A program made the translations under genes and the position numbers. From the NCBI RefSeq assembly GCF_037042905.1, contig NC_087259.1:24180001-24244000 (forward strand): 64,000 nt of DNA, in the 5' to 3' direction. Position 1 is the stretch's first letter; the number at the start of each line of letters is the position of its first letter. Under the pieces are notes generated by a model. It saw nothing but the letters and a program-made list of their open reading frames with translations, was not told the DNA's origin and made no database searches. The stretch is from Lytechinus pictus. Taxonomy: Eukaryota. Positions 1,501 to 54,624 of this stretch are shown here, piece after piece.

Positions 1501-2339
1501 TGTGGGGTACTGTTTTTTTTTCCAGCCGGGATATTGCTTGCCAGACCACAATGCTACCTGTACCTCCAAGCCATGGCACCACTGGTCAATGACAGTCTTT
1601 ATTATTTTATTCACAAAAATATATCTAAAAATAAATTGCACCTTTTTCAATCTAACCTAAACAATCTACAAAGTATTTTCGAAGACAACTACCAAACTTT
1701 ATGTGGGAGTGTTTCATGGAAGTTTTGATTGATGCTGACTTTGTTTGCTCTCAGCCAATCAAATGCAAGGATTTGCAGTAACTTATAACATTATCTAGAC
1801 TATTTGTCCATAGTTCATGAAATGCTCCCTCGGCTTGTCTCATAATCTACCTTTGTGTTGGTCCACTGATTTTTATATACTGTATATGGAAAACAGCATT
1901 GAGCCTGTTCATACTGCTTACCCATCCATTTCACATGTCCACTCTCTTGTGAATAAATGCTTCCATTGTGCCCCCCATGGCCCATCAGTTTATCTACCTG
2001 TGTTGTAATATATGGGGACATAGACAGCGACATGATCTGTTTGTCAAATTTTGTCATGACATATTTGTAATGTTGTTACTTCTGGATATGTAATCCCACC
2101 TACCCACTCGAATTACTCCAGTCTGCGTCAAAGCCATCCTTCAGCGGTGTCTTTCTCCGGCCCCTCGGTTCCCCCTCGCTCATCTTCCCACACCGTGAAT
2201 TCCAGGGAGCGTGAAACGCATCATGGCCTGAACGTCAGCCGCCATTTAGCCCCGTGTCAATCAGTGTCAGGGTTTGAATGCGAAATAGAAGCTTGGAGTG
2301 GCATCCGATTTGACTTTTCATCTCTCACGGATCAATGCT

Positions 2340-3065
2340 TCTGTCATTCCCATCTCTTCATTGCCCTGTCTTTCCATTGCCCTATCATTCATATCCTATC
2401 CCTCCACCCCCCTATCCCTTTATCATCTATCCCTCCCTTATTTGCCCCTTCATCACCTATCTCAACATTATCCTATCCTTCCATTGCCCTTTCTCCTTAT
2501 CCCTTCATCCATTCCTCCTTTGTCTATCCCTTCATTATCATTTCTTCATCAGTTCTGCCCCATATCACTTCATCACCTATCCCTCCTTTCTTTATTCCTT
2601 CATCACATATCCCTTCATTGCCCTATCCTTCATCATTTATCCCTCATTTGTTTATCCTTCCATGACATACCCTTCAATGTCCTATCATTTCACCACATAG
2701 TCCTATTTTATCTTTCCCTTCATTACCCATCTCTTCATTGCCCTGTCCTCCCATCGTATTCCTCCATCATGCTATCCCTCCTCTGTCTATTCCTTCATCG
2801 CCTATCACTCCATAGCCTAGCCCTTCAATGCCCCCATCACCCAATCCCTCTTTTGTCTATCCTTCATCACCTATCTCTCCATAACCTCGCCCTTTAACAC
2901 ATTATTCCTCCATCACCTATTCCTCCATCATCCCATCCTTCCTTCGTCCCTCCAAAACCAATTCCTCTTTATCTATTCCTTCATCACCTATCCTTACATA
3001 GCCTTGCCCTTCATCACCTATATCTTCATAGCCTACCCCCCCCCCCCCATCATCTTATCCCTGTA
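2340..3065. repeat. Pyrimidine-rich degenerate low-complexity repeat (CCTATCCCTTCATCA-like)
   Basis: Recurring CCTATC/CCTTCATCA motifs; explains the overlapping Ser/Pro/Leu/His-rich ORFs in all three frames. Confidence 0.85.
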
Positions 3066-4796
3066 TATTTTATTCCCTTCTTTCTAGTGGTAATTTACAA
3101 AAATGATGTGCAGATTCACAAAAGTTTTCTACATGTACATATGAAAGGATTTTTAAAATACATGATGTTCACTGTGAATATTCCTCTTCTCTGCCCCCCC
3201 CCCCTCCTTCCTTTCTTTTGTGGTCATTATACATGTACACATTTACAAATTTCAGAATATCCCCCAAATATTTTGTAACCATTATATTCAATCTCACCCA
3301 TGCCTATCCTTTAATCTTTTGAGGGTCTGGGGCTTTTTCATAAAACTGAATTTCACTTACAACTGATAATCTTTTCTTGTGATAAATGATATATCCATGT
3401 ATGTAGCATATTCAAATCATGCATAAATTTGCTCATAACTTTACAAACAGTTTTATGAAACAGCACCCAGGTTCCTTTCACTGTTTTATCTTCTATTCAT
3501 TTCACTTCCATACACATCCATCATTCCCCCTTTTCTTCATAGTGTAACCTCTGAAAATATGTCAGATATCTTGCGCTTGATCCCATTCCACAAGTTAGTG
3601 CTACACAAACTATGTATGTCACCCAAAAACTTATTTGAAAACCAATATCCTGGCATCTTTCACCAGAGTCTCCAAATGTCACATTCCTTAATATAGCTCT
3701 CCGCAAGTGTCTAAATGAAAATAAAAAACTATGTGGGGTCCATAATTGTATCTATTGACTTTCCTCTTACACTTCCTCTTGTTGGGGTTCAGGTCGTGAT
3801 CGAGGTTTAAGGTTGAATGAGGGGATTTTAGTCATTTCTTTTGTTGTTGTTGTTGATGCTAATGTTCATCTCATCATTTTGCTACCAGTCTGTCTTGTAA
3901 AAATTTCCCATTTTATAACCCAATTGTGGCATTCATTCCACATACTGCGGGTAATTAATTTCAATATTGAATGTTTTTAACAATTTGCAGTATATGAGTA
4001 GAAGGGGTTGGAGTATTTATGAATCTCTTCTTATCTTTTCCTCATATTGTACTTTGTGTGAGAGATTTTTGAAAATGCTTTATGAATATGCTTTAATATC
4101 TGAGCATTTGCATACCAGTAAATTGGCAAATTCAAAATCACAATGTTTTCATTGAAATTCTCATCTGTCGCAAATTTTTTTCAAAAAATATAAACCATGA
4201 AATCACTTTTTTTTTTCATTGAAATTCTGTCACATTCATCCTTTTCAGGGAGTTTTGATGATGTTCTTTTTAGGATCTGCATTCAATTTAGTAATGCAGG
4301 GTTAGAAATGCAGCAAAATGATAATTTGAAGAATATCATGCAGTCGATTAAGTTCAAAATAAAGCTTAACTGAGGGAATTACGCATTTAGTGAAGGCAAT
4401 GCTCTGTCTTACTTTATTAACCATTGCAGGGGATAATTGGTAGATTTTGGAATCCTCCATGATATTCTCCAGTTGTGCATCCCCCGAATGTGAGGAACAT
4501 GCATCTAATAATTTAACCATTGCTTTATTTGAAAATAATGCCCCCTTACCCCCTAAAAAAATAAAAAATAAATTGATGATAAAAATAAAATATGGGAATT
4601 CTCAATTTCAACTGCACTCATTTATGGAGAATGTTTCTATAAAGGTTTAGGTAATATTTATTTTATTTCATATCCACACTATATACATTGGACTGATTAT
4701 TATATGATAAAATCTCTTGGCTATATTTATTAAATCATTTCAGTTGAGCTTTGAAATTACAAATATTTTGTTGTTGTTTTTACCTACCGTATGCAG

Positions 4797-5185
4797 GCTC
4801 AGAGTTTGACCCTCTAAAGCTACGCCTGCCGACCGATGCACTTCTAGTGGTGGTCAACCGTCTCCCTCAAGCCGCATCCACCCTGGAGCTACTCAGTATC
4901 CATGGCAACAGCTCCACCTTCTCCGACACCTCCACCACCTCCTCGACAGACGGTCCTGGCCGTCCGACCGACCTGGTGCGCCTGGCTAGCAGACAGCTCC
5001 TGACCCACCTCAGGTCACTACAAGATTACATACGCAACACCGTTAGGAGGTCACGAATCCCTGCGGAGTCAGAGACGGGGGTGAAGCGCAGCAAGCACGT
5101 CAGGTTTGCTGAGCATCTCAATAAGAAGGCATTCATCTACAGGTATTCATCGATGTCCTCCGACACCGATTCTAGCGGGACGTGA
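4797..5185 (+). CDS. Terminal coding exon of an unidentified protein (...GSEFDPLKLRLPTDALLVVVNRLP...KRSKHVRFAEHLNKKAFIYRYSSMSSDTDSSGT*)
   Basis: Polypyrimidine tract plus CAG acceptor (tttacctaccgtatgcag|G) at 4796/4797, phase 1. GC-rich open frame to TGA at 5183-5185 in an AT-rich background. AATAAA signals at ~6928-6946. Upstream exons not found in the window. Confidence 0.75.
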
Positions 5186-9300: not shown

Positions 9301-12300
9301 AGCACCATCGGCATCCTGGGATTGGGATTGGGTTCTCGCTCGGTGCTGACAGCGGGGGTCTAAGTCTTCGAGCCAGAATAGAGGTCAGGTGACAGTCAGG
9401 AACCAATGAGTGATGGGGATTAACCCCGAGGTCAACCCTCTTCTAAACCAGAACCTAGAGAAGTTCCCCTGGTCTTGGGTTGCTTTAAGACTCATTGTCA
9501 TCCAACCGTGACTTATCGCTGGAAGCCTGAGCTGACATCCTTTATACCCTTACAGTGCTAGTTTGTTTTGCGCGGGATTGCAGCCCACAAACACACGTCA
9601 CATCGGGGAGATCCACCGGGGAATGATACGTGCGCAATCAAATCGCAGGATTACGTGCCCACTCCAGCACCTCATCCCCGGCTCAAACTGGAAGATACGA
9701 CCCTAAGACTGAATTAACATGCCAACATTTTTTTCCCTCTCTATCTCATCCTCCCTTCCTCTCCCTTGCATCCCTCTCTATCCACAAAAGTCACATGATA
9801 GAGGCTGTGTCGCATCCCTGTGGTGGAAACGACTCTTTTTTCAGCTACCACTACCTTCATACTCCCTTGCGGGTCTTGGATGAGACTCTGCGGCGCCAGC
9901 GCTAATGACTTTCCCCCCTTCTGTACCCCTAGTTTGGGGTTTTCACTGGTATCTATGGTTCATGGTTCCCTATAGTAACAAAAAATATATAAAATAAAGG
10001 AAAAAAGGAGAATGGATGGTGTCTAGTAACATTGATCAGTGATCAGGTAATGAATCATAATATTAAAGATTTGTAGCATTCCTTGACTTTGTCAATTCAT
10101 TTGAATATAATATTCAATTCGAATTTGTTCAGAAATATCATACAAATCATTATATAATTTGAATTGGTAATATGATTGAGATAACATGAAATACATGTAC
10201 AGAATTTTTTTTTTATTCAATTTTATTTTGAAATGATGATACTAAAATTATGAAAAGAGTAAATGTAAAAAATAAGTCATAGACCCACTTCAAAGTTGAA
10301 TTAATTGAGATAATAAGAGTGCATAATTCATTTACACTTATCCGAATTGAAATAACAAATTATATAGATGTAATGTCACTCCTCTCAATGTAGCGCTCAT
10401 GGTGTGTAAATTGATTCTTCAAATCTCTAGATTTGGGCAAGTTTTGATTCTACATGTTTTGTGCACAATCTTTATTGTGCATATTTGAGCTGTCATGCAT
10501 CACCTGAAAATTAGGGGGAAAAATTCAATTCATTTTATTTAACTTCAAAAATACAAACAGACCCAGCTATGATATTAATGATCAAAGTTAATCGATTACT
10601 TAGAATTGATTTTGAAAGTTATATGATTAAATGACAATATGATTACAATTGAGAGAAACATATTATAAGCTGTTGTAGTGTTGGTTGGAAGAGCATTGGG
10701 GTCAAGATACAATAAAAGTTTGTAAAAAAGGTAAAAATGCAGCCCAACAGATGGAGAATACATATAGGCCTACAGAGTACAAGTGTCAGCTAATTGCATT
10801 AGTGTGTTAAAGGCTCATATACGCTACATCTACATAATATATTGATGTATTTATATATTCTGTGTATTAGTTGTCATTACTTAAATACTGTCATTTGAAG
10901 ATTGATTTGGGGATGAGAGAGATTGGTTGACAAACTTCTAAAAAATTGTTAAGCTTTTTGATCCATGACATACAATATGAATTGATAGTTTTTAATCTTT
11001 GATGATGATTGAAATAAATTAATCTTGAATTCCTAGTGTGCTTATTCAGCAGATTCAGAGGGCTACACAAAATTCAAATTATGGGTTGAAAGTTAGTGAA
11101 TATGTTAGAAAAGAACAGTTTTCCGATTCTGAAATGCATTGATAGAGTGAAAGTTTAAAGAAATATCATATTGCTTCACAAATGCTTACATGTATCTTTA
11201 TTTTAAATGGTTATTTGTGATTTATGCCATTAGAAAATGTATAATATCAAAATTTCATTCATGGCATAGGTATTATGTACGTTATACATTCGTACATTAT
11301 TCGCTATCTGAACGCAAAAGGGATGTAAAGTCGAAACATTCATGGTAATACTACCTGGGGAGCCTTTCCTAAGAGTTATTTTCACTGACTATATGTTATA
11401 AGCTACTAAAATACTTGCATCTGATTGGATCAGAAGGAAGATGCTTCATGAAAAACTATCTTGGTATTGTTATTCCCTTGGATAATAAAGATACAATATA
11501 AAAAAAAAGTGTACAATGCAAAAAATCTTTATAAGATGAGATGGACTAATAGTAATAATAATAATAAACAGTTCTTGTATAGCGCATATCACAATTATGA
11601 ATAATGTCTCTATGCGCTTCCAAAGGACTTGGATATTCTGTAGCTGGGGTAGCTAATAGGCTCTTTGTAAATGATGAGTCAAGTTTCTCATGCAATAAAC
11701 TTGCAATCAATGGCAATTATGGCATATCACTTTTAGGCCCCCCAATCAATCTTAAATCATTCAATTTAATATGCACATATTTTGCTTGTCTACTTCTTGC
11801 AACAAAAAGATTATTGATTTGCTAGAGTTAATATTGACCCATTTACTGAACATTTGAAATTGAATTTGCAATCAATTGCTGATAATTTTTTTCTTGTAAA
11901 CTCTCCTAGGGTATTCATACCACTGCCCATCTTTAAACTTTCATGGCTGTAATGCAATTAGGTGACACTTGTACTTTGTATCTTTGAACCATCGTCCTGT
12001 TGCCTTGAATTTTCACCCCCTTTTTATAATTCTCTTTCATTGAATCTTGACCTTATACCAATCAATCTGTTTCCATTACAACCGCGCATTTCTACCATTC
12101 ATCCACTAATTTTTCACCCATCTACAGTCAATTAGTTTCATTTTGGTTTTTTTTTTTAGACAGTCGTTCACCTCTATTTCCCCACCTGGAAGACAAGGTC
12201 AGGGTAGATGTAGTCTAGTTCTAGACGATATTAAACGAATTTATTTGCACCGATATATACGTTCTATTCCGTGCGTACGCCCAGCCGAGTGTGCGCGCAA

Positions 12301-12889
12301 AACCGAGAACCTGTACTCCGAGGAAATATCGTCTAGATCAGTTGCTCAGCGGTGACGTCACTCCCTCAGATTTTTGAGGGAAAGTCGTTAAAAGTGGACA
12401 CGCCTCCCGTTCAGCTGTTAGTCTTTGTTAACAGCAGGGAAGATTACTGGGTTGAGAAATATGGTGTGATCTACCGATAAAATGAATATTAATTACCTAA
12501 GAAAGGACTTTTCGTTGTAAATAATTATAAAAGAAATCAAATTAAACACACAAAAACATCATAAATGAATCGCATCGTGTATGTTTCCCCTGATACCTAC
12601 AATAAGGTTTTTGAGCGTAGACTATCGTATATGGATTACATAATCAATCGGATCGCACAAAGCAGCACAACATAAGCCATAGACTTGTGTACTGTACCGT
12701 CTGCCGTGCTGTTGTATTAGGGAGACTCCCAACTCCCTGGTTGTATTGTGTAGGCCTATACATAATTATACAGCGCGCGGTTTCCAAATTTAGTTTCTTG
12801 CGTGTTTACCAAATCAGACAAGTCTTGATCACTTATCTTCGTTTTTTTTCATATATGGTGTGATGGTGACGGGAAATTAACGTCATTCT

Positions 12890-13035
12890 ATCAGAGATTC
12901 CATCCTGCATATTTCCAAACAGTTGGGAACAACGACTTTGAAGATCCTACAGAACAAAGCTAGCTCTCGAAAGTTTCCTCCGAGGCCACGATGTCTTCTT
13001 GAATATATCTACTGGGTATATATGGAAAGAGGGTA
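12890..13035 (+). pseudogene. Frameshifted RecQ-like superfamily 2 helicase fragment (motif 0 / Walker A region)
   Basis: Joining frames gives SKQLGTTTLK..EQ.LALESFLRGHDVFLNISTGY[+2 nt]GK, matching the RecQ pattern EQxxAlxxxLxGxDVFxxxPTGxGKS. Confidence 0.7.
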
Positions 13036-13295
13036 GCGACTTTATATCCTTCAAAATTGACACTCCCCTTGATTTGGGTTAATTATGTAATTTCTTCATG
13101 ATGCCAGTTTAATTGAAGTCACGTGGCCCCAAGTTTCATAAATGGAGTCACTTAAAAAGCAAGAAATTCTATATTTCCACATGTAAAATGACAATGACAA
13201 TTTTACACATTTCCTCATAAACTTGTTCCACAGAGTTGCTTCTTTTGTTCGCATGACAGTAATATATAGCAGGAAAATAATGGCAAAGTCATTAA

Positions 13296-13891
13296 AGGTC
13301 AAGTCCACCCCAGAAAAAAAATGATTTGAATAAATAGAGACAAATCAAACATGAATAATGGTGAAAATTTCATCAAAATCGGATGTAAAATAAGAAAGTT
13401 ATGACATTTTAAAATTTGGCTTATTTTTCACAAAACAGTTCTATACTCAACTCGGTGATATGCAAATGAGAGAGACGATGATGTCACTCACTCACTATTT
13501 CTTTTGTTTTTGTTTGAATAATACACTATTTCAATTTTTACGAATTCGACAATATTAGTACCCCTTTGCTCGAACCACAAAATGTTAGAATAATGGAATT
13601 ACATGTGTTCAGGGAGGAATGAAACTTTGTTAACAGACAATGACGAGAAAATCAAAATATTTCATATTTCATAAAATAAAATACAAAAGAAATAGTAAGT
13701 GAATGATGTCATCGGTCCCCACATTTGCATGCTGACTAAGATGTGCATATAACTGTTTTGAAAAATTAAGCGAAACTTGAAATTGTTATAACTTTCTTAT
13801 TTTACATCCAATTTTGATGAAATTTTCAGAGTTATGTTTGTTTGATTTTTCTTTATCTATTCAAGTCAGCTTGTTGGGGTGGACTTGTCCT
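13296..13891. mobile_element. TTAA-flanked MITE (~596 bp, Kolobok-like termini) nested in the AcademH element
   Basis: TTAA at 13292-13295 and 13892-13895; TIRs AGGTCAAGTCCACCCCA / TGGGGTGGACTTGTCCT with 1 mismatch. Confidence 0.85.
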
Positions 13892-13966
13892 TTAACTGGC
13901 AAGTTTGGTCTGAAATGTACTGTTCTTTCATAATATGGCTGACCAAACAATAATTGGAATTTGCAG

Positions 13967-14035
13967 GAGAACAAGAATACAGTAATTGTCTCCCTTTTGC
14001 ATATATTGAAGTGGACTGAGTAAACTCTCTCTGGA
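13967..14035 (+). pseudogene. Second decayed RecQ-like helicase exon remnant (motif Ia)
   Basis: After a ttgcag acceptor: ENKNTVIVSLLHILK, then a frame shift to D*VNSL, resembling RecQ motif Ia (VIVSPLxxLMxDQVxxL). Colinear with the upstream motif I fragment. Confidence 0.5.
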
Positions 14036-14116
14036 ACAAAAAAAATCCTAAAGAACCATGACCAAAACAAAACTCACAAGTCGGTCATATTTGTACGTAC
14101 AGTATAGCACTTTAAA

Positions 14117-15012
14117 CAGTGGCGTACCTACAATTTTCCACAGGGGGGGGGGGGCAAAACCGTCCGCCAAAAAAATTGACAAGCAAGAAAAAAGTCTTCA
14201 ATCACAAATAAAGGACTTCGTACCTGGAAAAAAAATTGACAAGCAAAACAAAAAAAGGTCTTCAAGCTCGTCAGGGGGGGGGGGCAATAAAGGTCTTCAA
14301 GCTCGTCAGGGGGCAAAAAAGGCTATTTTTTCAAGCTCGTCAGGGGGCCAAGATAGTCCTTCGCCCCACCAATAGAAATGATTGGGGGGCAAACATATCG
14401 TTTTGCCCCCCCCCCCCCTCCTCCAATAATTCCGCATGTACAAAAATAAAATAAGATATAGTAATGTTACACAGAAATCAGCAAGCGATATTGAGCTACA
14501 CAACTCGTTCTTTGTTTAAAATCGTGCTCAAATTGTCCGCTTTTCAGATTGGAATACAAAAATTTTCAGCTCGCGCTTCGCGCTCGCACCATTTCTGTAG
14601 CAAAACCCCACACTTTTCATCATTAAATAGGTGAATAGAATGTCCCGTTCTCAGTTCTAAGCCTCAAAAGAAGTCCCGCTTCGATTTGCAATAATCTTTT
14701 GTTGGATATAATCTTGTTCTTTATTAAAAACGTCCATTAAACTGTCATTTTTTTTCAGATCGAAATATCAAAATTTTAAGCTCGCGCTTTGCGCTCGCAT
14801 GTTTTGTCTTTTTTAGATACCCATCTTAATCATAGGTACCAAAATGCAGAGGATATCAAGCTTTCTGGTCAGAATATAAAGAAATTTCAGCTCGCCCTCG
14901 GCACTCGCATTATCTGTGTAGTGAGATATGTATTCTCCTCATGAGTTACTACAAACAGTCTTTAAAAGGCACCTTTTTCCTATTTTCAGGTCAGTTTACT
15001 AAAAAAATTCAG

Positions 15013-15059
<47 letters not shown>

Positions 15060-15156
15060 TGTGTGTGAGTTTGTTTGTTTTGTGTGATCGAGCGCCGTTG
15101 GAAAGTTGATTCATGATTCCCCCCCCCCCAATGTGAAAAAAAGATTGACGCCCCTG
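14117..15156. mobile_element. Composite hAT-like non-autonomous sequence nested in the AcademH element
   Basis: Starts CAGTGGCGTACCTA, highly similar to 59947-60316. Contains GCTCGCGCTTCGCGCTCGC repeats and a (TA)n tract at ~15015-15056. Ends GACGCCCCTG. No clean TSD. Confidence 0.6.
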
Positions 15157-17767
15157 TGTATATATAGTAAAAAAATTGCATCTCAATTAATATACACAAG
15201 TATCGGCCTCATCGCAATAAAAGGGTTAGTACACGAGATTTTGTGTTACTTTTTGCTTGTTTCTTTCTTTAATAAGTTTTTCAATCTCTCTCTATATATG
15301 TCTAAGAAAGATTATATGTCTAAATTCATGTATATTTTATGTTGTAATGATATATGTTTAAGTGGACTTCAGGGAATGGTCGTACGCAGCAAGGGGGAAG
15401 GGGGGGGGCAAATTCCCGATCAGTTGTTGTGAAAACACATTTTTTCCCTTAACATTTCATGAAAACTATGAAAAATGTGCAAATGTGAGATGTGTACCAA
15501 ATACTTTTATTACACTTTATAAAAAAATAATAATCGCCACATGAGCAGCTCGGTCCGTTTTTATTTTTCAAAAATATGTTCGAGATTTGCCCCCCCCCCC
15601 CGGAAATATTATCTGCGTGTGGTCATGCAAAATGGCATGACTGGAAATCCTACATTTTGAAAAGAGCATTTGACAGGGTCAGACTTCTGTCAAGTCATCA
15701 TTATTACTTTAAACTACAATTAAAACATAAAATAATTATTATCCTTTGTTTCTTAAAAAAAAAAAACTGACACAAGTCCTTCTCAGATGTGCTCATTATT
15801 GTGTCTATCCTCTCCTCTATTTTCTCCTCTCCGCTTATCCGCCTTCCTACGTACAGCAGCACCCATCCATCTTCTCAGGGCATTCTCCCCCTTTTTTTCT
15901 TCTCTTTTTCTGGGGGGGGTGGGAAGGGTAGATATTTTTAGGACGGGTTGTTTTGCCCTTCACCAAACTGTATATTTTTTATTACTTTGTATTTATTTTG
16001 TGAGTATTTCCCTCTCCTTTATTCATTCTTTTCTCATTTGATTATCTGTATTTATACTTTGTTATTTTGTTATTTGTTGTGTTATCTATTTCTTGAGGGG
16101 CCCACATTGTACCAGCATTGCTTTTTAGTGGGTTCCTCCATTTCCATCTTAATTTAATTTCTATTGAAAAATAGTATATATATTTAAAACCTACAATGTG
16201 TTGCCCAAATCGTCTAAGTGTTTTTTTTCACAACATATGTATTATTAATTTTGTTTGCAACGGATACAAATATTTATGTTTATATATGGTATACAATTTG
16301 TTTTTGTTTGATGGAAGTGAAATAAATGAATTTGAATTTGAATTGAATTTGACTTTTCCCCTTTTCATTTTCATTTATAGTGCAAAAATATGTGCGCCGC
16401 TCGGCGGTCCCCCCCCCCCCTTTCGCCAAAAGCTGGATCCGCCTATGCAAACTACATGTAAAAGTTACACTGCAATGGAATAGTTACTAGCAATTTAATT
16501 AACTGGCAAGGTACATGTAGATCTGAACATAATGCTCTTTCATAATGGCTGCAAAAAATATATTTCATAAATACTGTACTTCAAAGGTAATGAGAAAAGA
16601 TGCCTTTATTTATAGATCCAGACCGGACCCGAAAATGAAATTCATAAATTATATACCAATCGAAAGCTTATAAGCTACTAAATACAGCAAGGTATGCTAT
16701 ATTAATTTTCACCGCTTCCCAGCTGAGTATTTTGCTTAAGAATATTCCAATTATCGGGCTTCGAACCCCGCTTAGAAAATAGGCTTTATTGTGCTTTTCA
16801 CTTGCCTCGAGACCCTAACGTCACGTTGTGTAAGAAGCGTCGTGATTCCATAGGTTTGTACACAGAAACACTGGGTGATTTTTTTTTGCTTTCCAGATAA
16901 CGCATTTCATTCTCTTCACTTCTATCACAGAGGGATATCACATATATTTTTACCCACAAGCTTGAATTTATGAAATCTACAGTTTTGAACTAGTTTTTGC
17001 CATATTTATTTCCTGCTTACTTGGCGCAAATTTCAATTCTATCTGCATTTAGATTATGTATAATAACTTTTTCTGACATAGCAATTTAGGCCCAATAAGA
17101 GCCAAACAAAGAAATCACAAAAAAGTAGTGAATAGTTGTAGGTTTACAACAATTTGAACAGTGAATAATTTTGAGTGCCATTTTCATCTGAAAACGAAAA
17201 AAAAATGGATTCATAACATGGAAATGGAAGAAAATACCCAATGCTTTTGTACACAAACCTATGGAACCACAACCCTCCTGACACAACGTGACGTCATCAT
17301 TTCCAGGCGACATGGGGATGCTCAATCGAAGCGTACTTTGGAGGAGTAGTTTCTTTGATTTTTATTTAATATTTTTAACTATTGGAAGAATCATTACCTT
17401 TATTTTAATATATGATTGTTTTTACACCGGTCAGGGTCTTTATCGAAGAGGCTTCATGTACATCATTGGCAATATCATTTCCTGGCTACCTGTAGCTAGA
17501 TAATAATGTAGCTGAACAACAAAAATAATTGTACGCATTATCTACATGTTCATGTAAAGTAAATAAATAAACTAAAAGTTCCAAGGACAATTGTAAAGAT
17601 TTTCTTCCAAAATCTAATGCACGCATCAAAATCCACATTTGTGAGATTAATCTACTTTTAAAAATCAATAATGATTTTTATTCTGTTTTCCTTATCCCTT
17701 TCACAGCTCTGTACTAATCTGTACAAAGTACATGTACTTCTCAACCCTTTTTGTCATACTCTCTGAC

Positions 17768-19980
17768 CATGGGTGTCGATCGGTATGCTTGGTTGGGGGG
17801 GGGGGGTGATTGACACAAATGTTCTTGTGGATGGGGATCTTTCAACATTACCCCCACTAAAATTACAAGTTAGGACATTTGAGAGTGGTTGATATGCATG
17901 GTGTTCTTGGAAATTGCTTAATGCAAAAAGCATGAACTAGCGTTTCTTCACTGGACGTAGGGGAAAAGTAGGGGATTGTTGCAGTGTACTTTACTTATAT
18001 AATTTTTTTTTAAATTCAATTTGTGTTACAAGTAAGCTTATTATAAACCCATACGAAAGAAAAATGACAAAAATTGTCTGGACCATGTACAAAGTGATAT
18101 GTTTATTGAGCATGATGTATACAACTTCTCTCTTAAATCTAACCCGACTGGCAATATCTTTTTTCTTCTTAATGCATGATCATGATAAAATGCACATTCG
18201 GACAAAAAATATAAGACTAGCACAAATTACAAACTGTGTGGCTTCTCGTGTGCCATCGGGCTTACCGTCATTCCTTAGACGATTTTAACCCTGGATTTTA
18301 ACATGTTTTAAATACTTTATAAGTGCATGAAACAAAAACAAACATTAAAACAATCAAAACTCAACTGTCATGTTATGATATTTCTCCAACATTTTCTTGA
18401 ACCATCAGTGTGTAATATCAGCTAATATACATTATGTGTTAAAATGAAATTTACGTACCGCATGAGTGTGCTCATATAGAATGTAAAACTGCCATCCCTT
18501 TCCAAACTCAAAAGATATTTCTTTTTGCCAAAATAAGAAAAAAATAATCAAGTTTAGTTATTCAAGTCCATAACAATAACAAGAATAACATGAAAAAAAC
18601 ATCCGATGTTCATATCCTCATATCCGCTTTAGAGAGAATGAATGATTATTCTTTCTGAAACCATCAATTGATTTCACTTATTAAAAAAATTGTAAAAATA
18701 TGATCATATTATATTGAGCTCACTGAACCTCAATATTTTCATGAGAGGTATCTGATGGGGTCACATGATAAAATGTTTTAATATCAATTACATCCAACCG
18801 CATACAACAAAGGCACCATATATGAGCTACTGATCACCAAACGACCATTATGACTTTTTTTAAAGTGAAATTTTTGCATTTGATGTGGGCTCACTCTTTC
18901 ATGACTATAGGCACCTCATTTCCACATAGATAGATAATGAGGACATCGATGCTCTCCTGCAAAATATTATTGACCAAAAGTTATCGTTCAAGTCAAGGTA
19001 TTTGGATATACAAGTAGGGGTGACTTTCGTTTTGTGCACATCTTGCTTTTGGTATATTTTCTTGTTCAAGTTACTGAATGCCGAACTTAATATATAACTA
19101 CCATGACATACATCGGTAAAGTGTGTATAACCAGGCAAATAAATGAAGTGATAAGCCTATACTCTATAGAAACGCAAAGGTATTTTTCTTTTTCTCTGAA
19201 TTTTCTGGGAATGAATAAGAAAAAGGTGAAATAGAACAACATCTATTTCAGGTAGTCTCAATAATGTCCGAAAATCTTTCGCCTCATGTCAGACCTCATT
19301 GCAAATAACTTTTTATGACAGCGATCCCTGGCGATTTACTTATTTTACATAACTTCAAAAATGAAATGATATTCAAAAGGGTTGTAGATTAAATGGAACA
19401 AACATCATGCACTTGGATGTGGGGAGGGGTAAATCTGAGAAAAGTTATTTGTACTTTTTCAAAATTGCGGCCCTCTGGGATTTACGTCCATGGGGTTTTC
19501 CCTGTTTACTCCCGTTTATTTTTCCACCCGTTTATTTTCCCACCCTTTTGAATTAATTGATTTATTAAAATGTATTTATTCACCAATGCCTGGTGGGATA
19601 GAACACCCTATCAACAAAAGTTGTTTTTAGTTCATCGGGGTCCTTTTATGTCATGTGTTAAAAAATATCATATACATAAACATTTAAATTTTTGTCATCT
19701 TGAACCTCCACCCATCTGTTTTAAAGTCCTGGAAAAGAATGTTCTTATTTAATAACAATATACACACATTGCGACGGAAACAAACTGATTGATGGCATAC
19801 TATAATCATCACTATAATTATCATGATCATACTTTTTCATTTTTGATCATCATTATTTAATTTTTCTACCCTAAATTATTGGGGGGATGATAATACAGGC
19901 CATCCCCCCACTTGAAATATTAGGGGGGATATATCCCCCCATCCCCCCCCCCCCCCCCCCCCCGGTGATCGACACCCATG
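17768..19980. mobile_element. 2.2-kb non-autonomous hAT-like element nested in the AcademH element
   Basis: 14-bp TIRs CATGGGTGTCGATC / GATCGACACCCATG. 8-bp flanks TCTCTGAC (17760-17767) and TCTTTGAC (19981-19988), 7/8 match. Subterminal poly-G/poly-C tracts. Confidence 0.8.
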
Positions 19981-21333
19981 TCTTTGACAGTGAAATATGT
20001 GAAGAAGACTTTGAAAATGATATATTTACAAGTGCCCACAGTAAAATGTACCGTGATGTGATCCATTCACAAGAATGAGACTTTAATTACATTGTATGAG
20101 TCTAAATTTTCAATACCCATACTAAGACAAAATGCCTTTATGTAATTACATGTGTAGATGAAGAAGAATATAAAATATATCATTCAAACATGTACATTAA
20201 TCATTCCATCTGAGTAAAGTGGAAAAACTAGTCTGTATTGTTTTGAAGTTTGAAATTTGGTACATTAGCACCTTCTTTCATATATCATGATGGTAACATC
20301 ATACCCACAGATTTAACCAAGATATGCACATAGAGTGAAATAACTATTATGCATGTAACAGTAATTTCCCAACAATGAAATGTCTATTTGTAGCCTTAAA
20401 AGTAATGAACTATCTTAAACTGTCGTATGATACATGTACATGTATTCACATCACATAGATCACGGACGCTCACGTCCCTGCGCTGCATAGATCTACTACA
20501 TCAATCCCACGTGCACAATGTATGCACACAGCTGATAACGAGTGTGCAAAACGTAAACAACGTTGCACTGTTCGGCGCAGCGAGATTGACAAGTAACTCA
20601 TGCATATTCATGAGCACTCGTCCGTTGACCTTTGACCTCTGACGTCACCGCTGAGCAACTGATCTAGACGATATTTCCTCGGAGTACAGGTTCTCGGTTT
20701 TGCGCGCACACTCGGCTGGGCGTACGCACGGAATAGAACGTATATATCGGTGCAAATAAATTCGTTTAATATCGTCTAGAACTAGACTAGGGTAGATGCT
20801 GTGGGGGGATTTTCATGAAATTAATAATCAGTGATTTTCACTGGTAGCTGTTATAAGCTACTGAAATCCTTGTATCTGATTGGCTCAGAATGCATTAATT
20901 GGTGAAAATCACTGACTATTTGCTTTGTGAAACTCTCCCTTGTTCTCTACCACTGAGGTTTGCAATTCGTGAACTCTTTCGAGGATTCTTCATCGAAGGT
21001 TTCCAGTAAATGAGCTTTTCAGATGCTTTCATTCGAGTCCTAATTTGAACCCCTATTTAGGGATTCATTTTCTCATTTATTTTGTGTTGAGTTTTCTGTG
21101 TCTGTCGCTATCCATCTGGCGAAAGAAAAATTGTATTCACACCTCTTTTCATCTCCTCTCTCTATCTTTATTTCTATCTCTCACTTACAGTTGTTATATA
21201 TTTCCCTCTTGTTCTATTTACCTCCGCCACCCCCCCCCCCCCTCTACAGGCGCATAGATGGGGCAGAAAAGGGTCCACGTAACAGTTGTGGTGGTGTTGG
21301 TGGTGGTGGTGAAATAGTCAATAGTGGTAGAGG

Positions 21334-21716
21334 NNNNNNNNNNNNNNNNNNNNNNNNNNNNNNNNNNNNNNNNNNNNNNNNNNNNNNNNNNNNNNNNNNN
21401 NNNNNNNNNNNNNNNNNNNNNNNNNNNNNNNNNNNNNNNNNNNNNNNNNNNNNNNNNNNNNNNNNNNNNNNNNNNNNNNNNNNNNNNNNNNNNNNNNNNN
21501 NNNNNNNNNNNNNNNNNNNNNNNNNNNNNNNNNNNNNNNNNNNNNNNNNNNNNNNNNNNNNNNNNNNNNNNNNNNNNNNNNNNNNNNNNNNNNNNNNNNN
21601 NNNNNNNNNNNNNNNNNNNNNNNNNNNNNNNNNNNNNNNNNNNNNNNNNNNNNNNNNNNNNNNNNNNNNNNNNNNNNNNNNNNNNNNNNNNNNNNNNNNN
21701 NNNNNNNNNNNNNNNN
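21334..21716. other. Assembly gap (N run), followed by a (CTT)n-type microsatellite to ~21850; further gaps at 23595-23748 and 27310-27444
   Basis: Runs of N. Confidence 0.99.
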
Positions 21717-24700
21717 TTCTTCTACTTCTTATTCTTTTTTTTCTTCTTTTTCTTCTTCTTCTTCTTCTTCTCCTTCTCCTTCTTCTTCTTCTTCTTTTCC
21801 TTCTCCTCCTTCCCCTTCATCCTCACCTCTTCCTCATTCCTCCTACTCATCTTCCACTCCCTGGCATCATTCGAAAGAGTGCGGGTGGGGAGGGGTAGTA
21901 GCAAGTTGATGATGGGAGGGGGATTGAGGCTTTATAGATGAGAGAGGAAAAGAAGTGAGAGTGAAAATATTTCCATACACCTTTGTTGATCCTCTTTTCC
22001 CTAGAAAGCACTTGTTTACTTTTCTCAGTTCGTTGAAGTATCCTCTCAATAACATTGATTGAACATGATGAATGTGAAACATCTTTTGGCTCTTCCCTTC
22101 TCGTATTCCATTTCTTTAACCCTCTCGATCCCTCAAAACCGGCGAACAAGCCCTACTTACAAAGTAATATTGAAATGCCTATTATCTCGTGATTATAATA
22201 TCTAGCCCCTCCCCGTTCCTAAATCAAAGCATAAGTACAGGGGCGGAGGAATCGGGGGGGGGGGGGCTTCAGCACCCCCTTAGGTAACCATGTACAAACA
22301 TATGAAAACGAACATCAGATTGTGATTATATACATTTTCACCCCACCCCCACACATTCAAAATCGAGGCCCTTGGTGTCAACTAAAGATATTTATGTTTG
22401 TATTGCCCTATATATATTTCTTTTATTTATTTTCAGCATTTTAAGACCCCCGATCTTCCAGTTTTCTCGGAAAATTGATCACAATTATGGGCTTGAACGA
22501 ATGATAAAGTTACTTGGGCAGGACCAGGGTACACCCCGCCCTTCTTGCACAAAACATTTTTTTTTTAAATATAGGCATACCTTTTCATTTTTAGGGGGTG
22601 GGCTATTGGGGGTGGAGGGGTGCGTGAAACATTTTTATTTTTATTTTTTTTTTTTTTTGAGAAAGGCTACTGGTCACCCCCTCTGAGGGCTACTCCATGA
22701 GTGCCCACGCACTAGAAGCAAACATCACCTATCATCCGAGTTGCTCCAATCCGCTCCACCAACTCACCCGTCCCAGCGGCAATTTGGTTTGACAGCTCGC
22801 CTAATCCGGCCCGCCTGTACTCCGACAGCAAGAGCCTATTCACCACCACTGGACTTGCCTGACTCTCTCTCCCTGCCCGCCAGCCGAACCCTCCCCGCAA
22901 CACGGTTCGTGATTATTTACGAAATCTCGCAGTAATCCTCAACTGTCAAAAGCAGGCAATGGGATCTCTTTTTGACAGGCAATTCAGTAAAACCTTCTTA
23001 TTTATCATAGGATAGTGAGGTTAACGTAACCCATGTCTTCCTTAGCACGGCATTAGGAGGACAAGTGAGCACGGGAAATAACAGTTCATAAAACTCCAGA
23101 CGAAGGGGGTAGACCGATATGATAATCTAATATTGATTTTGTCGGTTGTTACCATTTTGAAAGTTTTGGCTTGATTTTATCATTTACTTTTTCAAGTGAT
23201 CGCTCCATTTTCTTCATGGGAAGAAAACTTTGCAACTAGTTTTTAGCTTAAGTTATAGTTTCAACATCGCTATAGATAACTTTATTTGAAATATTTGTGT
23301 TTTCTTTATTGTGATTCGCCAGATTCTTAAGTTTCATTTAATTATAGATAATTACACAAAAACAAAAGGCCCAAATGATTAAACAGCAAGAAATTAACCA
23401 GTTTGATTGGCAACGTGATATGAAGACGTTGGCATAATCAATACATCAACAATCGTCAATTTACTTCAGTATAAAATGTTTAATATTAACCTTCATGTGC
23501 AAAATCGCATTTTTTTTCAAACCTTGACTGCACTTCCATCACCAATATCTTTATGACATCATTTTCAAAATCATCATCAATCTTTAGACCTATTNNNNNN
23601 NNNNNNNNNNNNNNNNNNNNNNNNNNNNNNNNNNNNNNNNNNNNNNNNNNNNNNNNNNNNNNNNNNNNNNNNNNNNNNNNNNNNNNNNNNNNNNNNNNNN
23701 NNNNNNNNNNNNNNNNNNNNNNNNNNNNNNNNNNNNNNNNNNNNNNNNGCAGCCATCTTCATCGTCGTCATAATAATCGTAATCATCGTTTTATTGCATC
23801 ATAATTGTCAATTTTGTTGTCATCCTTTGACAAAATGCAGATCAACATCAACTTGTTTCGTTCTCACAGTGAAGAAAACAATAATTTAAGTAGTGGTTTT
23901 ATGTGACAAAGTAAAATTAGTCATGCGCGTGAATGTTTTGTTATTTAAATAAATAAAGCTATATTTGTTTTGTTCAATGAACATTACAAATTATTTTTGT
24001 CATTACAAACATTTCTATGACTCATGGATTCATAATTTTCAAATTGAATGACGAATTAATGAACAGGATATAATGAGATGCTGATTTGTCATTTTCACTT
24101 CGTCACAAAACACATGGCTTGTCTGTTTATATTGTTGATAATTGTATATTTTTGTTACTTGGTGGCCCCTTTTTGTAACCTTCACTTTATCCGGGGTCAC
24201 CTTTACATTATTGTATTTTTGTATAAAACCTGTTGTCAATCTGTCTGTAATGTTTTGTATCTGATGGTTAAACAAACAAATTAAATTGAATATTACAAGA
24301 AGAATTATATATTCATTCGATATATCCTCCACAATTTCCTTATTCACATCAAGAAGAAGACATATGATAACAGTTCTTATAAATGTATAAATTCTCTCTT
24401 TCTAAGCTGTGATTGCAAAGATAATGTTAATTTTTAATGATTTTGGCGGGCCAATATGGAGATATTGCCCAAATTAGTTATCACCGCCGGAGTCATCAAC
24501 CGAGGGCAATAGATTATAAATAGTGATGAGGGTATATATTTTGGAATGGTGAGTCCATTTTATGAGTATTAATTGCACATATCTCGTATAATCTCTTGAC
24601 AAACAAGAGAGTGATTCCTGTTTCCCTTTTTCCCCTTTCTCTTTAATTTACTTTTAATCACTTCCGAAGAAGATATGTTAGAAATGCAATCCTAAAGCAT

Positions 24701-27700
24701 CGCGCTCGCTTATATTAACTATGTATCTGAATAAAATTTCCAATTGCTGTTGTATAACCGGACAAAACGACAATTTTGATAATTTTGCACACCATTTTAT
24801 AATTTGTTACAAAGTAATGTTTGAACATATTAAATGCTGAGGACGAATGTCCACAGGTTTCTTTTTTTCGATGAACATGTTGTGGAAAATCCAACGGCAT
24901 CCATCCCATCCTTCTTTTCTTTAAACTGATGTAACAATATACTTGTCTAGTACAGGTAAAAATAACCTAGGTCATAATGACCGATGAACGTGATGAAGTA
25001 AATCATTACTCTAAAAGATTTCGAAATAATTGTCTCCTCGTTTGTGAGGAGTGACAAAGGAGAACTGCCAAGATAAAACGAGTCTGTCAGTCATTGGTCA
25101 ATGAATTCACCCTTTTATAGAATTTTAAAGTTAATCATCGTCACCAAAATATTTACTTCTATTTTCAGATATCTGTCAAATATTAGTATATTCTTAATAT
25201 CAATAAGCTAAGTGTTACCAACAAACAAATTAGGTGGTCATCGAGAGTGAATAAGAGTTAGTCATTTAGGGATGCTCTTTCGAATTAGCATTTATTGATA
25301 AACCTGATATAAAGCGATGTCTCAATGCATTTATCGACTCTTATTTCAATTGTAGAGAAGATGAAAACTGGAAGTCCTCTTTAACTGAAGAAATGTCGAT
25401 GTCAGAACAATCTGGATTGAAGACTAAAGAAGGAATGGGACGGGGGAATCAAAGCTTCCCAAATTTCGTTGATACTGTGTAAACATATTACTGTTCGATT
25501 TATTGGTCAAACATTGATACCCGACAATTTGAAAGTTTCGTTGTTGTAGAAAGCGCATCAAAGGAAAATGCTTGTAATTTTTCATTAAAGCGCTACTCAA
25601 TTGACATGAAATAAAACCCGCACTAACATTCGCAATGTCTCTAAACGCTTCTAGAATTTCATACTTTTCATATTCGTTCGGAAAAGTAGAAGAAAAAAAA
25701 ACATCACATCGGGTTAAACTATCTCAATCGAAAACCGCGCCAAAAATGTCGGGAAGTGGGTCACTTGCATCGCGTCCTTGGATCCAGTGTGCAGACGATT
25801 TGTCATCCTCAACATTTCGAAGTGCACACTAGTTTAGGGAATTGTGAAACAAAGGTGGACTTAACTCGGAGGGAATGAACTCCAAGAGGGCTTAACTAGC
25901 CTGGTTCAAAACCTGTGGCCTTATTTATTTGTCACTATTTTACAGTAAACTGCAAGCCCCCTTCTCTCTACAATTCATGATCAAACTTCAGTTTAAGAGT
26001 CGTCCATAAAGAGTTTGTCATTAATTCTCCTACTTTTACATGATGACATACATGTCTACATTTGTAAATGAAATTCATAAGATTTTAATGCAGCACAAAG
26101 AAATTGTGTTACGCTACTTATGGCCTTTAGATTGATTGAGAGTGATATTTAAAGAAAGGAGGATTACAAGATTAAACCCTTGAAAACAATCATTCAAAAC
26201 GGTTCTTGGCGACACGACCAGGGCGACTTCGGAGCCGGGGCTTCGATTGCGAGAATGGTAAATAAAAAAGGCATACATATCTATCGATGTTCGATTTTCT
26301 GTGCTTTAATCAGAAGAAAACCTTTTCTCTCTTTGCTTTATCAAAATGCCTGATTTGGAATGACGACTGTATTATTTGGCTCTGTCTACCGTGGTGATAG
26401 TGGCGGTGGAGGGGTTGGTTCCTACCAATCTATCTCTGTCAAAAAGCAATGGGTGAATCACGGCATGTTTCTGTGGTGGGGGATCGAAGGCTTTAGGGTC
26501 ATTTTTTTCACCGCGAATAGTGGCATATATATACATGTATATGTTGTATCTATCCTAGGAGGCAAAGGGTGTAAGTCTATTGAATGAAATGGGCATTGGA
26601 TGAAATGCCATTTATAATAAAGTCAAAGACTAATGGACGGTTAAATAATATGCAATATGGATGACTGATCTATGATGACTTTACATTAAGCTGGACGTTT
26701 GATTAACTCCTTTAAAGAGATCATAATTTTTAAGTTCACATTGAAGGACACGTGTATCCACCATACTTATGAAACTGATGTTAATGAAGTTTCTTTTACA
26801 CAGCGCGTTCGCCAAACATAATGAGGAGATGCAGGAAACTTTTACAATGTCCCATTACTCGGGTTTTCATTTATTTCTTTGTCATTATATGATTTGTTTG
26901 ATAAAATTAATTTTTTGCGTTATTATTGTAACTTGTTGTATCCTTGTTCAATTGTTGTTATCACGCCCTTGCTGAAAAACAGATTGATGCAAATTGTGGG
27001 CACTTCTGTATATTGCATAAGTATCTGATTTTCAAAAAAAAAAATCACTGTGATAATTACGGTAACTTTGCAATTGAAATATTTCATTTCTCCAATAGAA
27101 ACCAGATTCGGTATAATAGGAATGAAGCTCATCGACCTGAATTAGTAATATCACGACAAAATATATCATAAATATTGCGAATAATTACACACTGCATGCA
27201 GCTACAGGTGTACAGGGGGGCAACCGCCTCTAATGGGTTTCTTGTTGCTGTTTTTTTTGGTCGTTTATAGAATGATATAAACCAAACTATGGATAAATGA
27301 AAACAAGAANNNNNNNNNNNNNNNNNNNNNNNNNNNNNNNNNNNNNNNNNNNNNNNNNNNNNNNNNNNNNNNNNNNNNNNNNNNNNNNNNNNNNNNNNNN
27401 NNNNNNNNNNNNNNNNNNNNNNNNNNNNNNNNNNNNNNNNNNNNATTTTGAACAAGAGATTGCGTTACTTGTATGCAATACTCCCTTTTTTAACCATTCC
27501 CCTCCTCATTTTCTATAACTTATTTATGTACATTATTACTTTTATACATTGTTATTCAATGTCTATTTTATGTATTATGTATTTTATCTGATAACTTGAG
27601 GGGAAATAAACCAAACTTGAAACTTGAATAAATCAAATCCTATACCGACTTTGGTCGTCTTACCCCTTCAGCGAAAATCATGCGTAATGGAGGAGTGGTA

Positions 27701-31615: not shown

Positions 31616-33411
31616 CCCCCGGATCCAGGGGGCGAGGGGCCTGCCCCCCCCCCCTATTGGCGGAGAAAAAAAGAAGGGAAAAGAGAGGAGATAAAAAGAA
31701 ATGGAAACATAAGAGGTGGAAGACGAGTGAATAAAATAAGATGAGGGGAAGACTTGGAAAATAATATAAAAAAATCTCTTATGTCATTATATATAATTTT
31801 CGCTCGCGCTTCGCTCTCGCATTGCCTTTGAGGTGATTTTCATATCTTCCTCAATATAGAGCTTAAAATATCAAATCTTGAAGTCAATATACAAAACATA
31901 TTTCAGCTCGGAAATCGAACTTTCATTATTTTGTTTGATTTACAAATTGATTTTTAAAAGGTGCTCTGTAAAAATTTCTGTTTTATGGTCTGAATATTAA
32001 TATTTTCGGCTCGCAAAATTTTATTTGTTTGGTACCTATAATTTTCCTGTATTCCATAAAGTTCTCAAAATATCCCTATTCAGGTCAGATTCTCAAAACG
32101 TATCAGCTAGCGCTGCACGCTCGCATTTTATGTAAATCTCAATATTAATTCTATAACAAACTACTTAAAATCCCCATTTCATGACAGTTTATCAAAAAAT
32201 TCGGCTCGCGATTTGCGCTCGCATTGATTGTTGTAAATATATTAACTTATGCATCTTATTCATAATTACAAAAAAGCTTTAAATGTCCAGTTTTCAGGCC
32301 ATAATATTAACAGATTTCGCGCTCTCCTTAGGCTTATTAGATTAATAAATAAGATATTAATTTAAATGATCAAATTGTCCCTTTTTCAAAATGGAATATC
32401 GACAAGTTTCATCTCGCGCATAGGAAGAGAAATAGGAAGATAGTCATCATTTTCATATGATGACATAATTAATGTTCTTAGAATATCCCGGTCCTATGTC
32501 AAAACTCAAAGTAATAATAATGAAACATATTATAAAACAGGGCTTAAATTGACCCTTTTTAAGATCAGAATATCAAATATTTCAAGCTCGCTTTATTGAT
32601 TTTCATGATAAGAAAAGGTATTTAGAATGCCCAGATTCTTGGTCGAAATCTGAAACACGCCTGCGCATTTTTATTCAGATACGCAGCTTGTTCTCTATCT
32701 AAATCATTATCCAGTTTCAGATCACATTATAAAAAAAAATCTGCTCGCGCTTTGCGCTCGCATTAATGTAGGAAGATTTCCAATTACTCATCATTTTCAT
32801 GATTTACAAAACATGAATAGAGTGTCCCATTTTTAGGTGTAAATTTCTAATTTTTCCCGCTCGCACTTCGCGCTCGCATCAATATTGTTTAGTTATATAC
32901 TTATCCTTTTCACGATTACAAAAAGTCCTTAGAAGTTCCATTCTTAAGGTAGAAATGTCGAAATTTTCAGCTCGCGCTTCGCGCTAGCATTATCTGATTG
33001 TTGAAATATGTAACGTCTTCATAGCTAACTGCAAGCAGCCGTAAACAGATCCTTTTTTGACCAGATGAAAACGTATATTAAAAAATTTCTGATCGCGCTT
33101 CGCGCTTGCAGTAATTGTTTAGTTGGATACACATCTCGTTTAGGATCACAAACATTACCCAGAATGTTTAAATTTTAGGAAAATATACATAAAATAAAAA
33201 AAAAATAGCTCGCGCTTCGCACTCGCACAATTTAAATAAGGCTTATGAGATTATCATATATTTATGTTGATTTATAAGAATGAAGCTTAGAAGTGACTAT
33301 TGGGATTACCTCTTCAAATCAACAAACAAAAATCAACTTCGAGAGGCCGATCTGTGAAAATGTGGCTGAAAACCCCCCCCCCCCTATTGGCAAAGGCTGG
33401 ATCCGCCCCTG
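31616..33411. mobile_element. ~1.8-kb non-autonomous element of the GGATCCGCCCCTG-terminated family, containing a degenerate ~115-bp satellite
   Basis: Left end CCGGATCCAGGGGG (degenerate), right end CTGGATCCGCCCCTG. Internal repeats with core GCTCGCGCTTCGCGCTCGCA at ~32743, 32859, 32970, 33091, 33208 and weaker copies from 31802. Confidence 0.75.
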
Positions 33412-54000: not shown

Positions 54001-54624
54001 ATGCCATTTCATGCATTTAGTTATTCCTTCCGAATTTGCATGAGCTTGCAATAATTTTGTGATGAAAATGCTCAAATGACGGGAACTGACAAATAGGAGA
54101 ATTTTTTGCCGTTGAATGTCATGAAAACCAATTTCAAAATGAGATGATTGTAATGAATATTTTGCCAAGTTGATATGGTTACATTTGGGCGGGAAAGATA
54201 CAACTGTTGAATATCTGTTTAACAGTTTTGTCCTTTTTTTTTACAAAAGGGATTTATGCCAGTATTTCACATTTGATTAATATAAGATAAACCGTTTTAC
54301 GAACATATGAATAAACCTGATAAAGCATTCTTTCTAATTTTGCCTAGCAGCAAAACTCTTTTTCCATAAAGCAATTTATTTCCATCTACCTTCTTACGTT
54401 GCTATAAAATACATGATTAAAAAACAACTTTTATTGCTGTCATAGTTTTTTTTTATCGAGAGTGAAATTGAATGATTTCTTTTGCATATTTTTTAATTTT
54501 TTTTTATTTATCTATATATTTATTTTATTTTGTTTATTTTTTTTTCGGGGGGGGGGGCGCTTTATTTTACCGAACCAATCAACAACAATTTACAAACAAT
54601 GATTAAAACACATCTCGCCCTCAC

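What the first reader, a model, noticed from the sequence alone, without database searches (positions are those of the whole stretch)
12202..20798. Recently inserted 8.6-kb AcademH-type transposon with perfect ends and a dead helicase
Seen in sequence: exact 150-bp TIRs with TAG/CTA termini and an exact 9-bp TSD enclose 8.3 kb with no intact ORF but with frameshifted RecQ helicase motifs 0/I and Ia in order. Established: the AcademH lineage of Academ transposons encodes a RecQ-like SF2 helicase and makes 9-10 bp TSDs, whereas AcademX makes 3-4 bp TSDs. Inference: pristine ends around a heavily decayed interior mean a non-autonomous derivative that moved recently. That implies an active or recently active autonomous partner in this genome for a poorly characterised superfamily.
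Basis: partly seen in the sequence, partly recalled or inferred. Interest (0 to 1): 0.8.

Follow-up and report, generated by a model that had tools for sequence, protein, structure and literature searches.

The report
Non-coding transposon, no dead helicase
An 8.6-kb mobile DNA element with perfect 150-base inverted ends and a 9-base target duplication is really there, but it carries only non-coding filler; the claimed broken helicase gene is a chance pattern from runs of G, so its assignment to the rare AcademH group has no positive support.

Summary
The structure is confirmed. There are 150-nt, 100% complementary terminal inverted repeats (12211-12360 / 20640-20789), flanked by an exact 9-bp direct repeat GGGTAGATG, with no long ORF between them.

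The "frameshifted RecQ motifs" are not confirmed:
- All 201 stop-free pieces of at least 27 aa give no DEAD, Helicase_C or transposase hit in Pfam.
- E. coli RecQ matches the element no better than it matches shuffled sequence.
- The Walker-A-like strings (GGGGKT/S) are translations of poly-G/poly-C runs. Two of them lie in a dispersed non-coding repeat that has a second copy outside the element carrying the same string.

The interior has the GC content, CpG depletion and ORF-length profile of the surrounding non-coding DNA, and it holds a nested MITE and other repeats. The arms, in contrast, are strikingly CpG-rich.

Best reading: a non-autonomous cut-and-paste DNA transposon carrying passenger DNA, probably inserted recently, in an echinoderm-like genome downstream of a Prrx-type homeobox gene.

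The superfamily is unresolved. A 9-bp TSD with long TIRs fits Mutator-like elements at least as well as AcademH. No other copy could be retrieved. This is an ordinary finding of low interest.

The parts
12202..12210 (.). Left target-site duplication, GGGTAGATG
   Evidence: identical 9-mer immediately outside both arms.
12211..12360 (+). Left terminal inverted repeat, 150 nt, starting TAGTCTAG. It is CpG-rich (15 CpG, o/e 1.84).
   Evidence: I1, 100% complementary; identity ends exactly at base 150; CpG.
12220..12232 (+). 13-nt motif TCTAGACGATATT (outer copy, left arm). It is a candidate transposase-binding site (inference).
   Evidence: the motif occurs four times in the window, all in the arms, as an inverted pair 92 nt apart in each arm.
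12325..12337 (-). 13-nt motif, inner inverted copy, left arm
12353..12360 (.). Palindrome TGACGTCA at the inner edge of the left arm. The mirror copy is at 20640-20647.
   Evidence: Read. Its role is unknown.
12361..20639 (.). 8279-nt non-coding interior (passenger DNA). It has no helicase or transposase remnant detectable with Pfam.
13292..13895 (.). Nested MITE-like element with about 114-nt arms (82% complementary) and TTAA at both ends
   Evidence: I2, I14.
14111..14420 (.). Copy of a dispersed G-run repeat. It is the source of the pseudo 'Walker A' strings at 14144(+) and 14416(-).
   Evidence: a second copy lies at 59941-60330, outside the element, with the same translated string FPQGGGGKTVRQK.
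16804..17308 (.). Second internal inverted-repeat structure (81-nt arms, 77% complementary)
   Evidence: I3.
20640..20789 (-). Right terminal inverted repeat, 150 nt, ending CTAGACTA
20790..20798 (.). Right target-site duplication, GGGTAGATG

Best explanation
This is a non-autonomous cut-and-paste (TIR) DNA transposon. Two identical, CpG-rich 150-nt arms enclose 8.3 kb of non-coding passenger DNA that never encoded, or no longer detectably encodes, any protein.

Inferred mechanism:
- A transposase made elsewhere in the genome binds the arms. The paired 13-nt motifs TCTAGACGATATT are the obvious candidate binding sites.
- It excises the element and inserts it at cuts staggered by 9 nt.
- Gap filling then produces the GGGTAGATG duplication.

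A 9-bp stagger with long TIRs fits a Mutator-like (MULE/Foldback-type) transposase best and an AcademH-type transposase second. The superfamily cannot be decided from this single copy. The insertion is probably young.
For: Shown:
- Perfect 150-nt arms and an exact 9-bp TSD.
- Abrupt loss of arm similarity at base 150.
- No protein-coding signal. 101 stop-free pieces of >=40 aa and 100 of 27-39 aa give no helicase, transposase or nuclease family in Pfam at E<=1. The same procedure finds the host homeodomain exon at 6.7e-15.
- RecQ tblastn scores at shuffle level.
- The stop-free length profile equals that of flanking non-coding tiles.
- Interior GC is 0.350 and CpG o/e 0.68, against 0.361 and 0.74 outside. 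The arms have CpG o/e 1.84, reached by only 0.3% of outside 150-nt windows.
- The interior contains a nested TTAA-flanked MITE and copies of repeats found elsewhere in the window.

From the literature:
- MuDR TSDs are 4-10 bp; AcademH TSDs are 9-10 bp (PMC10045372).
- Long TIRs are typical of MULEs (PMC3310237).

Inferred age: no difference in 150 arm positions plus 9 TSD positions bounds arm-to-arm divergence below about 2% (95%), if the arms were identical at insertion.
Against: - Only one copy is available. No second copy, autonomous partner or empty site could be retrieved, so mobility and family size are inferred from structure alone.
- The Academ transposase domain has no Pfam model (PMC5751038), so a badly decayed Academ transposase remnant cannot be excluded.
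- The TAG terminus is not the G-rich terminus I recall for many MULEs. That is memory only and was not tested.
- At 8.6 kb the element is large for a non-autonomous element.
Confidence: 0.8

Rival explanations
1. One reading: a non-autonomous AcademH element whose interior is a decayed RecQ-like helicase gene.
For: - The 9-bp (or 10-bp) TSD falls in the AcademH range of 9-10 bp (PMC10045372).
- Three GGGGK[ST] strings lie inside the element.
Against: - AcademH helicases are recognised by Pfam DEAD and Helicase_C (PMC10799480). None of the 201 pieces hits either at E<=1.
- The RecQ tblastn best score is 20.8 bits, against a shuffle mean of 20.2 and maximum of 23.9.
- All three strings sit on poly-G/C runs, and 33 such runs are scattered over the window.
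- Two of the three lie in one copy of a dispersed repeat. Its other copy, outside the element, carries the same string.
- The strings are on different strands and about 1.2 kb apart, not 25-30 aa apart as helicase motifs I and Ia would be.
Confidence: 0.04
2. An AcademH-mobilised non-autonomous element without any helicase remnant. Only the ends are AcademH-derived.
For: TSD length (PMC10045372). AcademH is reported from animals, as the title of Kojima 2020 states (cited in PMC10045372).
Against: There is no positive sequence evidence. TSD length is shared with MuDR. Terminal sequences of AcademH families could not be consulted because the paper and Repbase are not held.
Confidence: 0.2
3. A Mutator-like (MULE, Foldback or Pack-MULE-like) non-autonomous element that has picked up or retained genomic DNA between long TIRs.
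For: - A 9-bp TSD plus 150-nt TIRs is the classic MULE signature (PMC3310237, PMC10045372).
- The interior is compositionally indistinguishable from host non-coding DNA and full of other repeats.
Against: - No MULE transposase fragment, SWIM domain or DNA-binding domain was found.
- No recognisable captured gene fragment was found.
- The terminal motif could not be compared with known MULEs.
Confidence: 0.4
4. Not a transposon: a local inverted duplication or an assembly artefact that creates two identical 150-nt arms.
For: There is a single copy in the window, the arms are 100% identical, and assembly gaps lie nearby (21334-21716).
Against: - The exact 9-bp direct repeat lies precisely at the outer edges of both arms, which neither process predicts.
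- The arms have sharp edges and a composition unlike their surroundings.
Confidence: 0.03

Closest known systems
Non-autonomous Mutator-like elements (MULEs, including Pack-MULE and Foldback-type) of the MuDR superfamily
   Same: 9-bp TSD, TIRs over 100 nt long, no transposase of its own, and an interior of unrelated or host-like DNA.
   Different: No MULE-derived sequence of any kind was detected. The terminal motif is TAG rather than the G-rich start I recall for many MULEs (memory only, not tested). No captured gene fragment is recognisable.
AcademH lineage of the Academ superfamily (Kojima 2020, cited in PMC10045372)
   Same: TSD of 9-10 bp, and occurrence in animals.
   Different: The defining helicase (DEAD/Helicase_C) leaves no trace here. 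The Academ transposase and the characteristic termini could not be compared.
hAT-superfamily non-autonomous elements
   Same: TAG terminus (hAT ends are often YARNG, from memory).
   Different: The TSD is 9 bp, not 8. The fifth base does not fit YARNG (TAGTC). The 150-nt TIRs are far longer than typical hAT TIRs.

Membership tests
AcademH (Academ superfamily) | TSD of 9 or 10 bp | tested here: met
   The 9-bp repeat GGGTAGATG (10 bp if the shared A is counted). Criterion from PMC10045372.
AcademH (Academ superfamily) | Encodes, or visibly derives from, an SF2 helicase (Pfam DEAD + Helicase_C) | tested here: not met
   201 stop-free pieces give no such hit at E<=1. RecQ tblastn scores at shuffle level; the pseudo-motifs lie in a dispersed repeat. 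Domain identity from PMC10799480.
AcademH (Academ superfamily) | Academ-type DDE (RNase H-like) transposase or a remnant of it | not testable with these tools
AcademH (Academ superfamily) | Terminal sequence similarity to described AcademH families | not testable with these tools
   Repbase is not available, and the Kojima 2020 paper is not held.
MuDR / MULE | TSD of about 9 bp (range 4-10 bp) | tested here: met
   PMC10045372.
MuDR / MULE | Long TIRs (about 100 nt or more) | tested here: met
   150 nt; PMC3310237.
MuDR / MULE | MULE transposase (Pfam MULE, Transposase_mut, SWIM) in the element or in TIR-sharing partners | tested here: inconclusive
   None is in this element, as expected for a non-autonomous copy. 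Partners could not be retrieved.
hAT | 8-bp TSD | tested here: not met
   The direct repeat is 9 bp. An 8-bp reading needs an asymmetric extra terminal base plus a 1-in-4 coincidence.

The most novel reading that the evidence does not exclude
The element is a currently mobile, possibly polymorphic member of an undescribed echinoderm DNA-transposon family. Its partner might be an AcademH-type or an unclassified transposase. Its unusually CpG-rich, perfectly identical 150-nt arms with paired inverted 13-mers would define a new end architecture, and it can carry more than 8 kb of host DNA.
Probability: 0.12. Interest if true: 0.4.

Novelty: new member of a known kind. Interest (0 to 1): 0.15.

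Why it matters
As it stands this is routine repeat annotation: one more non-autonomous TIR element in a repeat-rich invertebrate genome.

The useful result is negative. G-run-derived 'GGGGK[ST]' strings in this genome mimic Walker A motifs, and a 9-bp TSD alone must not be used to call AcademH.

If the family proves active, it would be a handle on a transposase able to move cargo of 8 kb or more in an echinoderm. That would be of modest interest for transposon biology or tool building.

Tried and rejected
1. Other copies of the element:
- TIR 30-mer in the window: only the two arms.
- Low-stringency blastn of both 400-nt ends against the window: nothing.
- Exact 27-mer and a gapped 13-mer pair pattern in JGI metagenome contigs: 0 hits. 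Viral contigs: 0 hits.
- Exact look-up of two end-overlapping ORFs among called genes: not on record.
- The 47-aa TIR-derived peptide against 5.8 billion proteins: no candidate.

2. Empty site:
- No paralogous uninterrupted site in the window.
- No Pfam-recognisable exon within about 10 kb on either side that could fetch an orthologous locus.

3. Helicase: rejected.

4. RNA genes: no tRNA and no Rfam family anywhere in the window.

5. Arm hairpin: the single-strand fold of one arm is not unusual (z = -1.1), so a structured-DNA end is not indicated.

6. The AcademH source paper could not be read.

7. Considered and rejected:
- A MITE swollen by later nested insertions. That would make the arms old, yet they are identical, and no inner TSD or TIR abuts the arms.
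- A Polinton. That needs a 6-bp TSD and polymerase and integrase genes.
- A composite of two short elements. Each end is a single arm, not a full element.

Full report
**1. Observation**

Reading the two ends and the repeat finder (pair I1) confirm the structural claims:
- The arms 12211-12360 and 20640-20789 are 150 nt and 100% complementary, with 8279 nt between them.
- The arms start TAGTCTAG and end CTAGACTA.
- GGGTAGATG lies immediately outside both arms (12202-12210, 20790-20798).
- The last base of the right arm (A) also matches the base before the left repeat. The duplication can therefore be read as 10 bp with a 149-nt arm, but 9 bp with symmetric arms is the simpler reading.
- The terminal 30-mer occurs nowhere else in the window, and shuffles give 0 matches.
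- Similarity between the two ends stops abruptly at base 150.
- Each arm carries an inverted pair of a 13-mer, TCTAGACGATATT, 92 nt apart. This 13-mer occurs only in the arms.
- Each arm ends internally with the palindrome TGACGTCA.
- The longest ORF is 108 aa and the longest stop-free piece 115 aa.

**2. The helicase claim**

The only Walker-A-like strings in six frames are at 14144(+), 14416(-) and 15600(-). Each sits on a homopolymer run: G12 at 14143, C13 at 14406 and C12 at 15590. The window holds 33 such runs.

I cut the element into all stop-free pieces, 101 of at least 40 aa and 100 of 27-39 aa, and scanned each against Pfam.
- No DEAD, Helicase_C, ResIII or RecQ-specific domain appears at E<=1, and no transposase or nuclease family either.
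- The best values (0.013 and 0.0057) are unrelated families at the level expected from about 100 queries.
- The same procedure on the rest of the window recovers a homeodomain exon at 6.7e-15 and an OAR motif, so it can see real exons.
- PMC10799480 states that AcademH helicases are recognised as Pfam DEAD and Helicase_C. This is therefore a direct test.

A deliberately permissive tblastn with E. coli RecQ (L001) gives a best score of 20.8 bits. Thirty shuffles of the element give 20.2 on average and 23.9 at most.

The stretch 14111-14420 is one copy of a dispersed, G-run-containing repeat. A second copy lies at 59941-60330, outside the element. That outside copy translates to the same string, FPQGGGGKTVRQK. 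The 'helicase motifs' are chance products of non-coding repeats.

**3. What the interior is**

- It contains a nested MITE-like element with TTAA at both ends (13292-13895).
- It contains a second inverted-repeat structure (16804-17308).
- It contains copies of at least two repeat families seen elsewhere in the window and several microsatellites.
- Its GC content (0.350) and CpG o/e (0.68) match the rest of the window (0.361, 0.74). Each arm has 15 CpGs in 150 nt (o/e 1.84), a count reached by 0.3% of 150-nt windows outside.
- Its stop-free length profile (101 pieces of >=40 aa, 13 of >=75 aa, maximum 115) matches equal-sized tiles of flanking non-coding DNA (92.5 +/- 8.9; 15.2; about 133).

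The interior behaves like ordinary, compositionally equilibrated genomic DNA carried between two compositionally distinct ends. It does not behave like a decayed gene.

One limit applies. The Academ transposase domain has no Pfam model (PMC5751038), so a very decayed Academ transposase remnant cannot be excluded with these tools.

**4. Context**

The window carries a paired-type homeobox gene on the minus strand, with exons at 54565-54882 and 47319-47663 (homeodomain plus OAR). The closest named proteins are 'paired mesoderm homeobox protein' of the starfish Asterias rubens (56% identity) and of the sea cucumber Holothuria leucospilota. The source is therefore probably an echinoderm (inference). 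The element lies about 26 kb beyond the 3' end of that gene. No Pfam-recognisable exon lies within about 10 kb on either side.

**5. Mechanism**

Shown: a discrete segment bounded by perfect inverted ends and a 9-bp direct duplication of flanking sequence.

Inferred from the established behaviour of DDE cut-and-paste transposons:
- A transposase supplied in trans binds the arms. The paired 13-mers are the natural candidate binding sites.
- It excises the element and inserts it at a 9-nt staggered cut.
- Repair of the gaps creates the duplication.

The element is non-autonomous because it encodes nothing.

Age:
- Zero differences in 150 arm positions and 9 TSD positions bound arm-to-arm divergence to below about 2% (95%).
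- This dates the insertion only if the arms were identical in the donor, because TIRs, unlike LTRs, are not regenerated from one template at each transposition.
- The undecayed CpG-rich arms beside a CpG-depleted interior point the same way.

**6. Comparison with known families**

A 9-bp TSD is within the AcademH range of 9-10 bp. It is also within the MuDR/MULE range of up to 10 bp (PMC10045372). Long TIRs are the MULE hallmark (PMC3310237).

With the helicase evidence gone, nothing favours AcademH over a MULE-type partner. hAT is disfavoured by TSD length and TIR length.

My split is roughly MULE-type 0.4, AcademH 0.2 and other or unknown 0.4.

Every route to further copies or an autonomous partner failed:
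- the window itself;
- metagenome and viral contigs;
- called-gene look-ups;
- a protein search with the TIR-derived peptide.

No empty site is available.

**7. Verdict**

This is a real, structurally pristine, probably young non-autonomous TIR transposon of unresolved superfamily. It is not demonstrably AcademH and contains no dead helicase. It is ordinary, and the interest is low.

Noticed in passing
window 47319-47663 (-) and 54565-54882 (-): Two exons of a paired-type homeobox gene (homeodomain split across them, OAR motif near the C-terminus). The closest named proteins are Prrx-like proteins of Asterias rubens and Holothuria leucospilota, so the window is probably echinoderm DNA.
   Followed up: partly
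window 13292-13895: MITE-like element nested in the transposon: about 114-nt arms (82% complementary) with TTAA at both ends. This suggests a piggyBac- or Kolobok-type TTAA-targeting family.
   Followed up: partly
window 14111-14420 and 59941-60330: Dispersed repeat with G11-13 runs and about 35-nt subrepeats (GGTCTTCAAGCTCGTCAGGGGG). Its translation mimics a Walker A motif (FPQGGGGKTVRQK) in both copies.
   Followed up: yes
window 14504-14978 and 32190-33057: Another repeat family sharing the core TTTTCAGCTCGCGCTTCGCGCTCGCA. Three copies lie inside the element and several lie near 32-33 kb.
   Followed up: no
window 12353-12360 and 20640-20647: The palindrome TGACGTCA (the consensus of a cAMP-response element, from memory) forms the innermost 8 nt of both arms. 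It might be a promoter or binding element, or it might be chance.
   Followed up: no
window 2060-3275 (+): Strongly C/T-skewed low-complexity tract (GC skew -0.44) that gives overlapping 170-200-aa Ser/Pro/Leu-rich open frames. It looks like simple sequence, not a gene.
   Followed up: no
window 4748-5182 (+): 145-aa open frame with a balanced, protein-like composition that includes KHVRF (reminiscent of a PP1-docking RVxF motif, from memory). It has no Pfam hit and may be a terminal exon of an unannotated gene.
   Followed up: no
window 21334-21716, 23595-23748, 27310-27444: Three runs of N (383, 154 and 135 nt). The first is only about 540 nt from the right end of the element.
   Followed up: no
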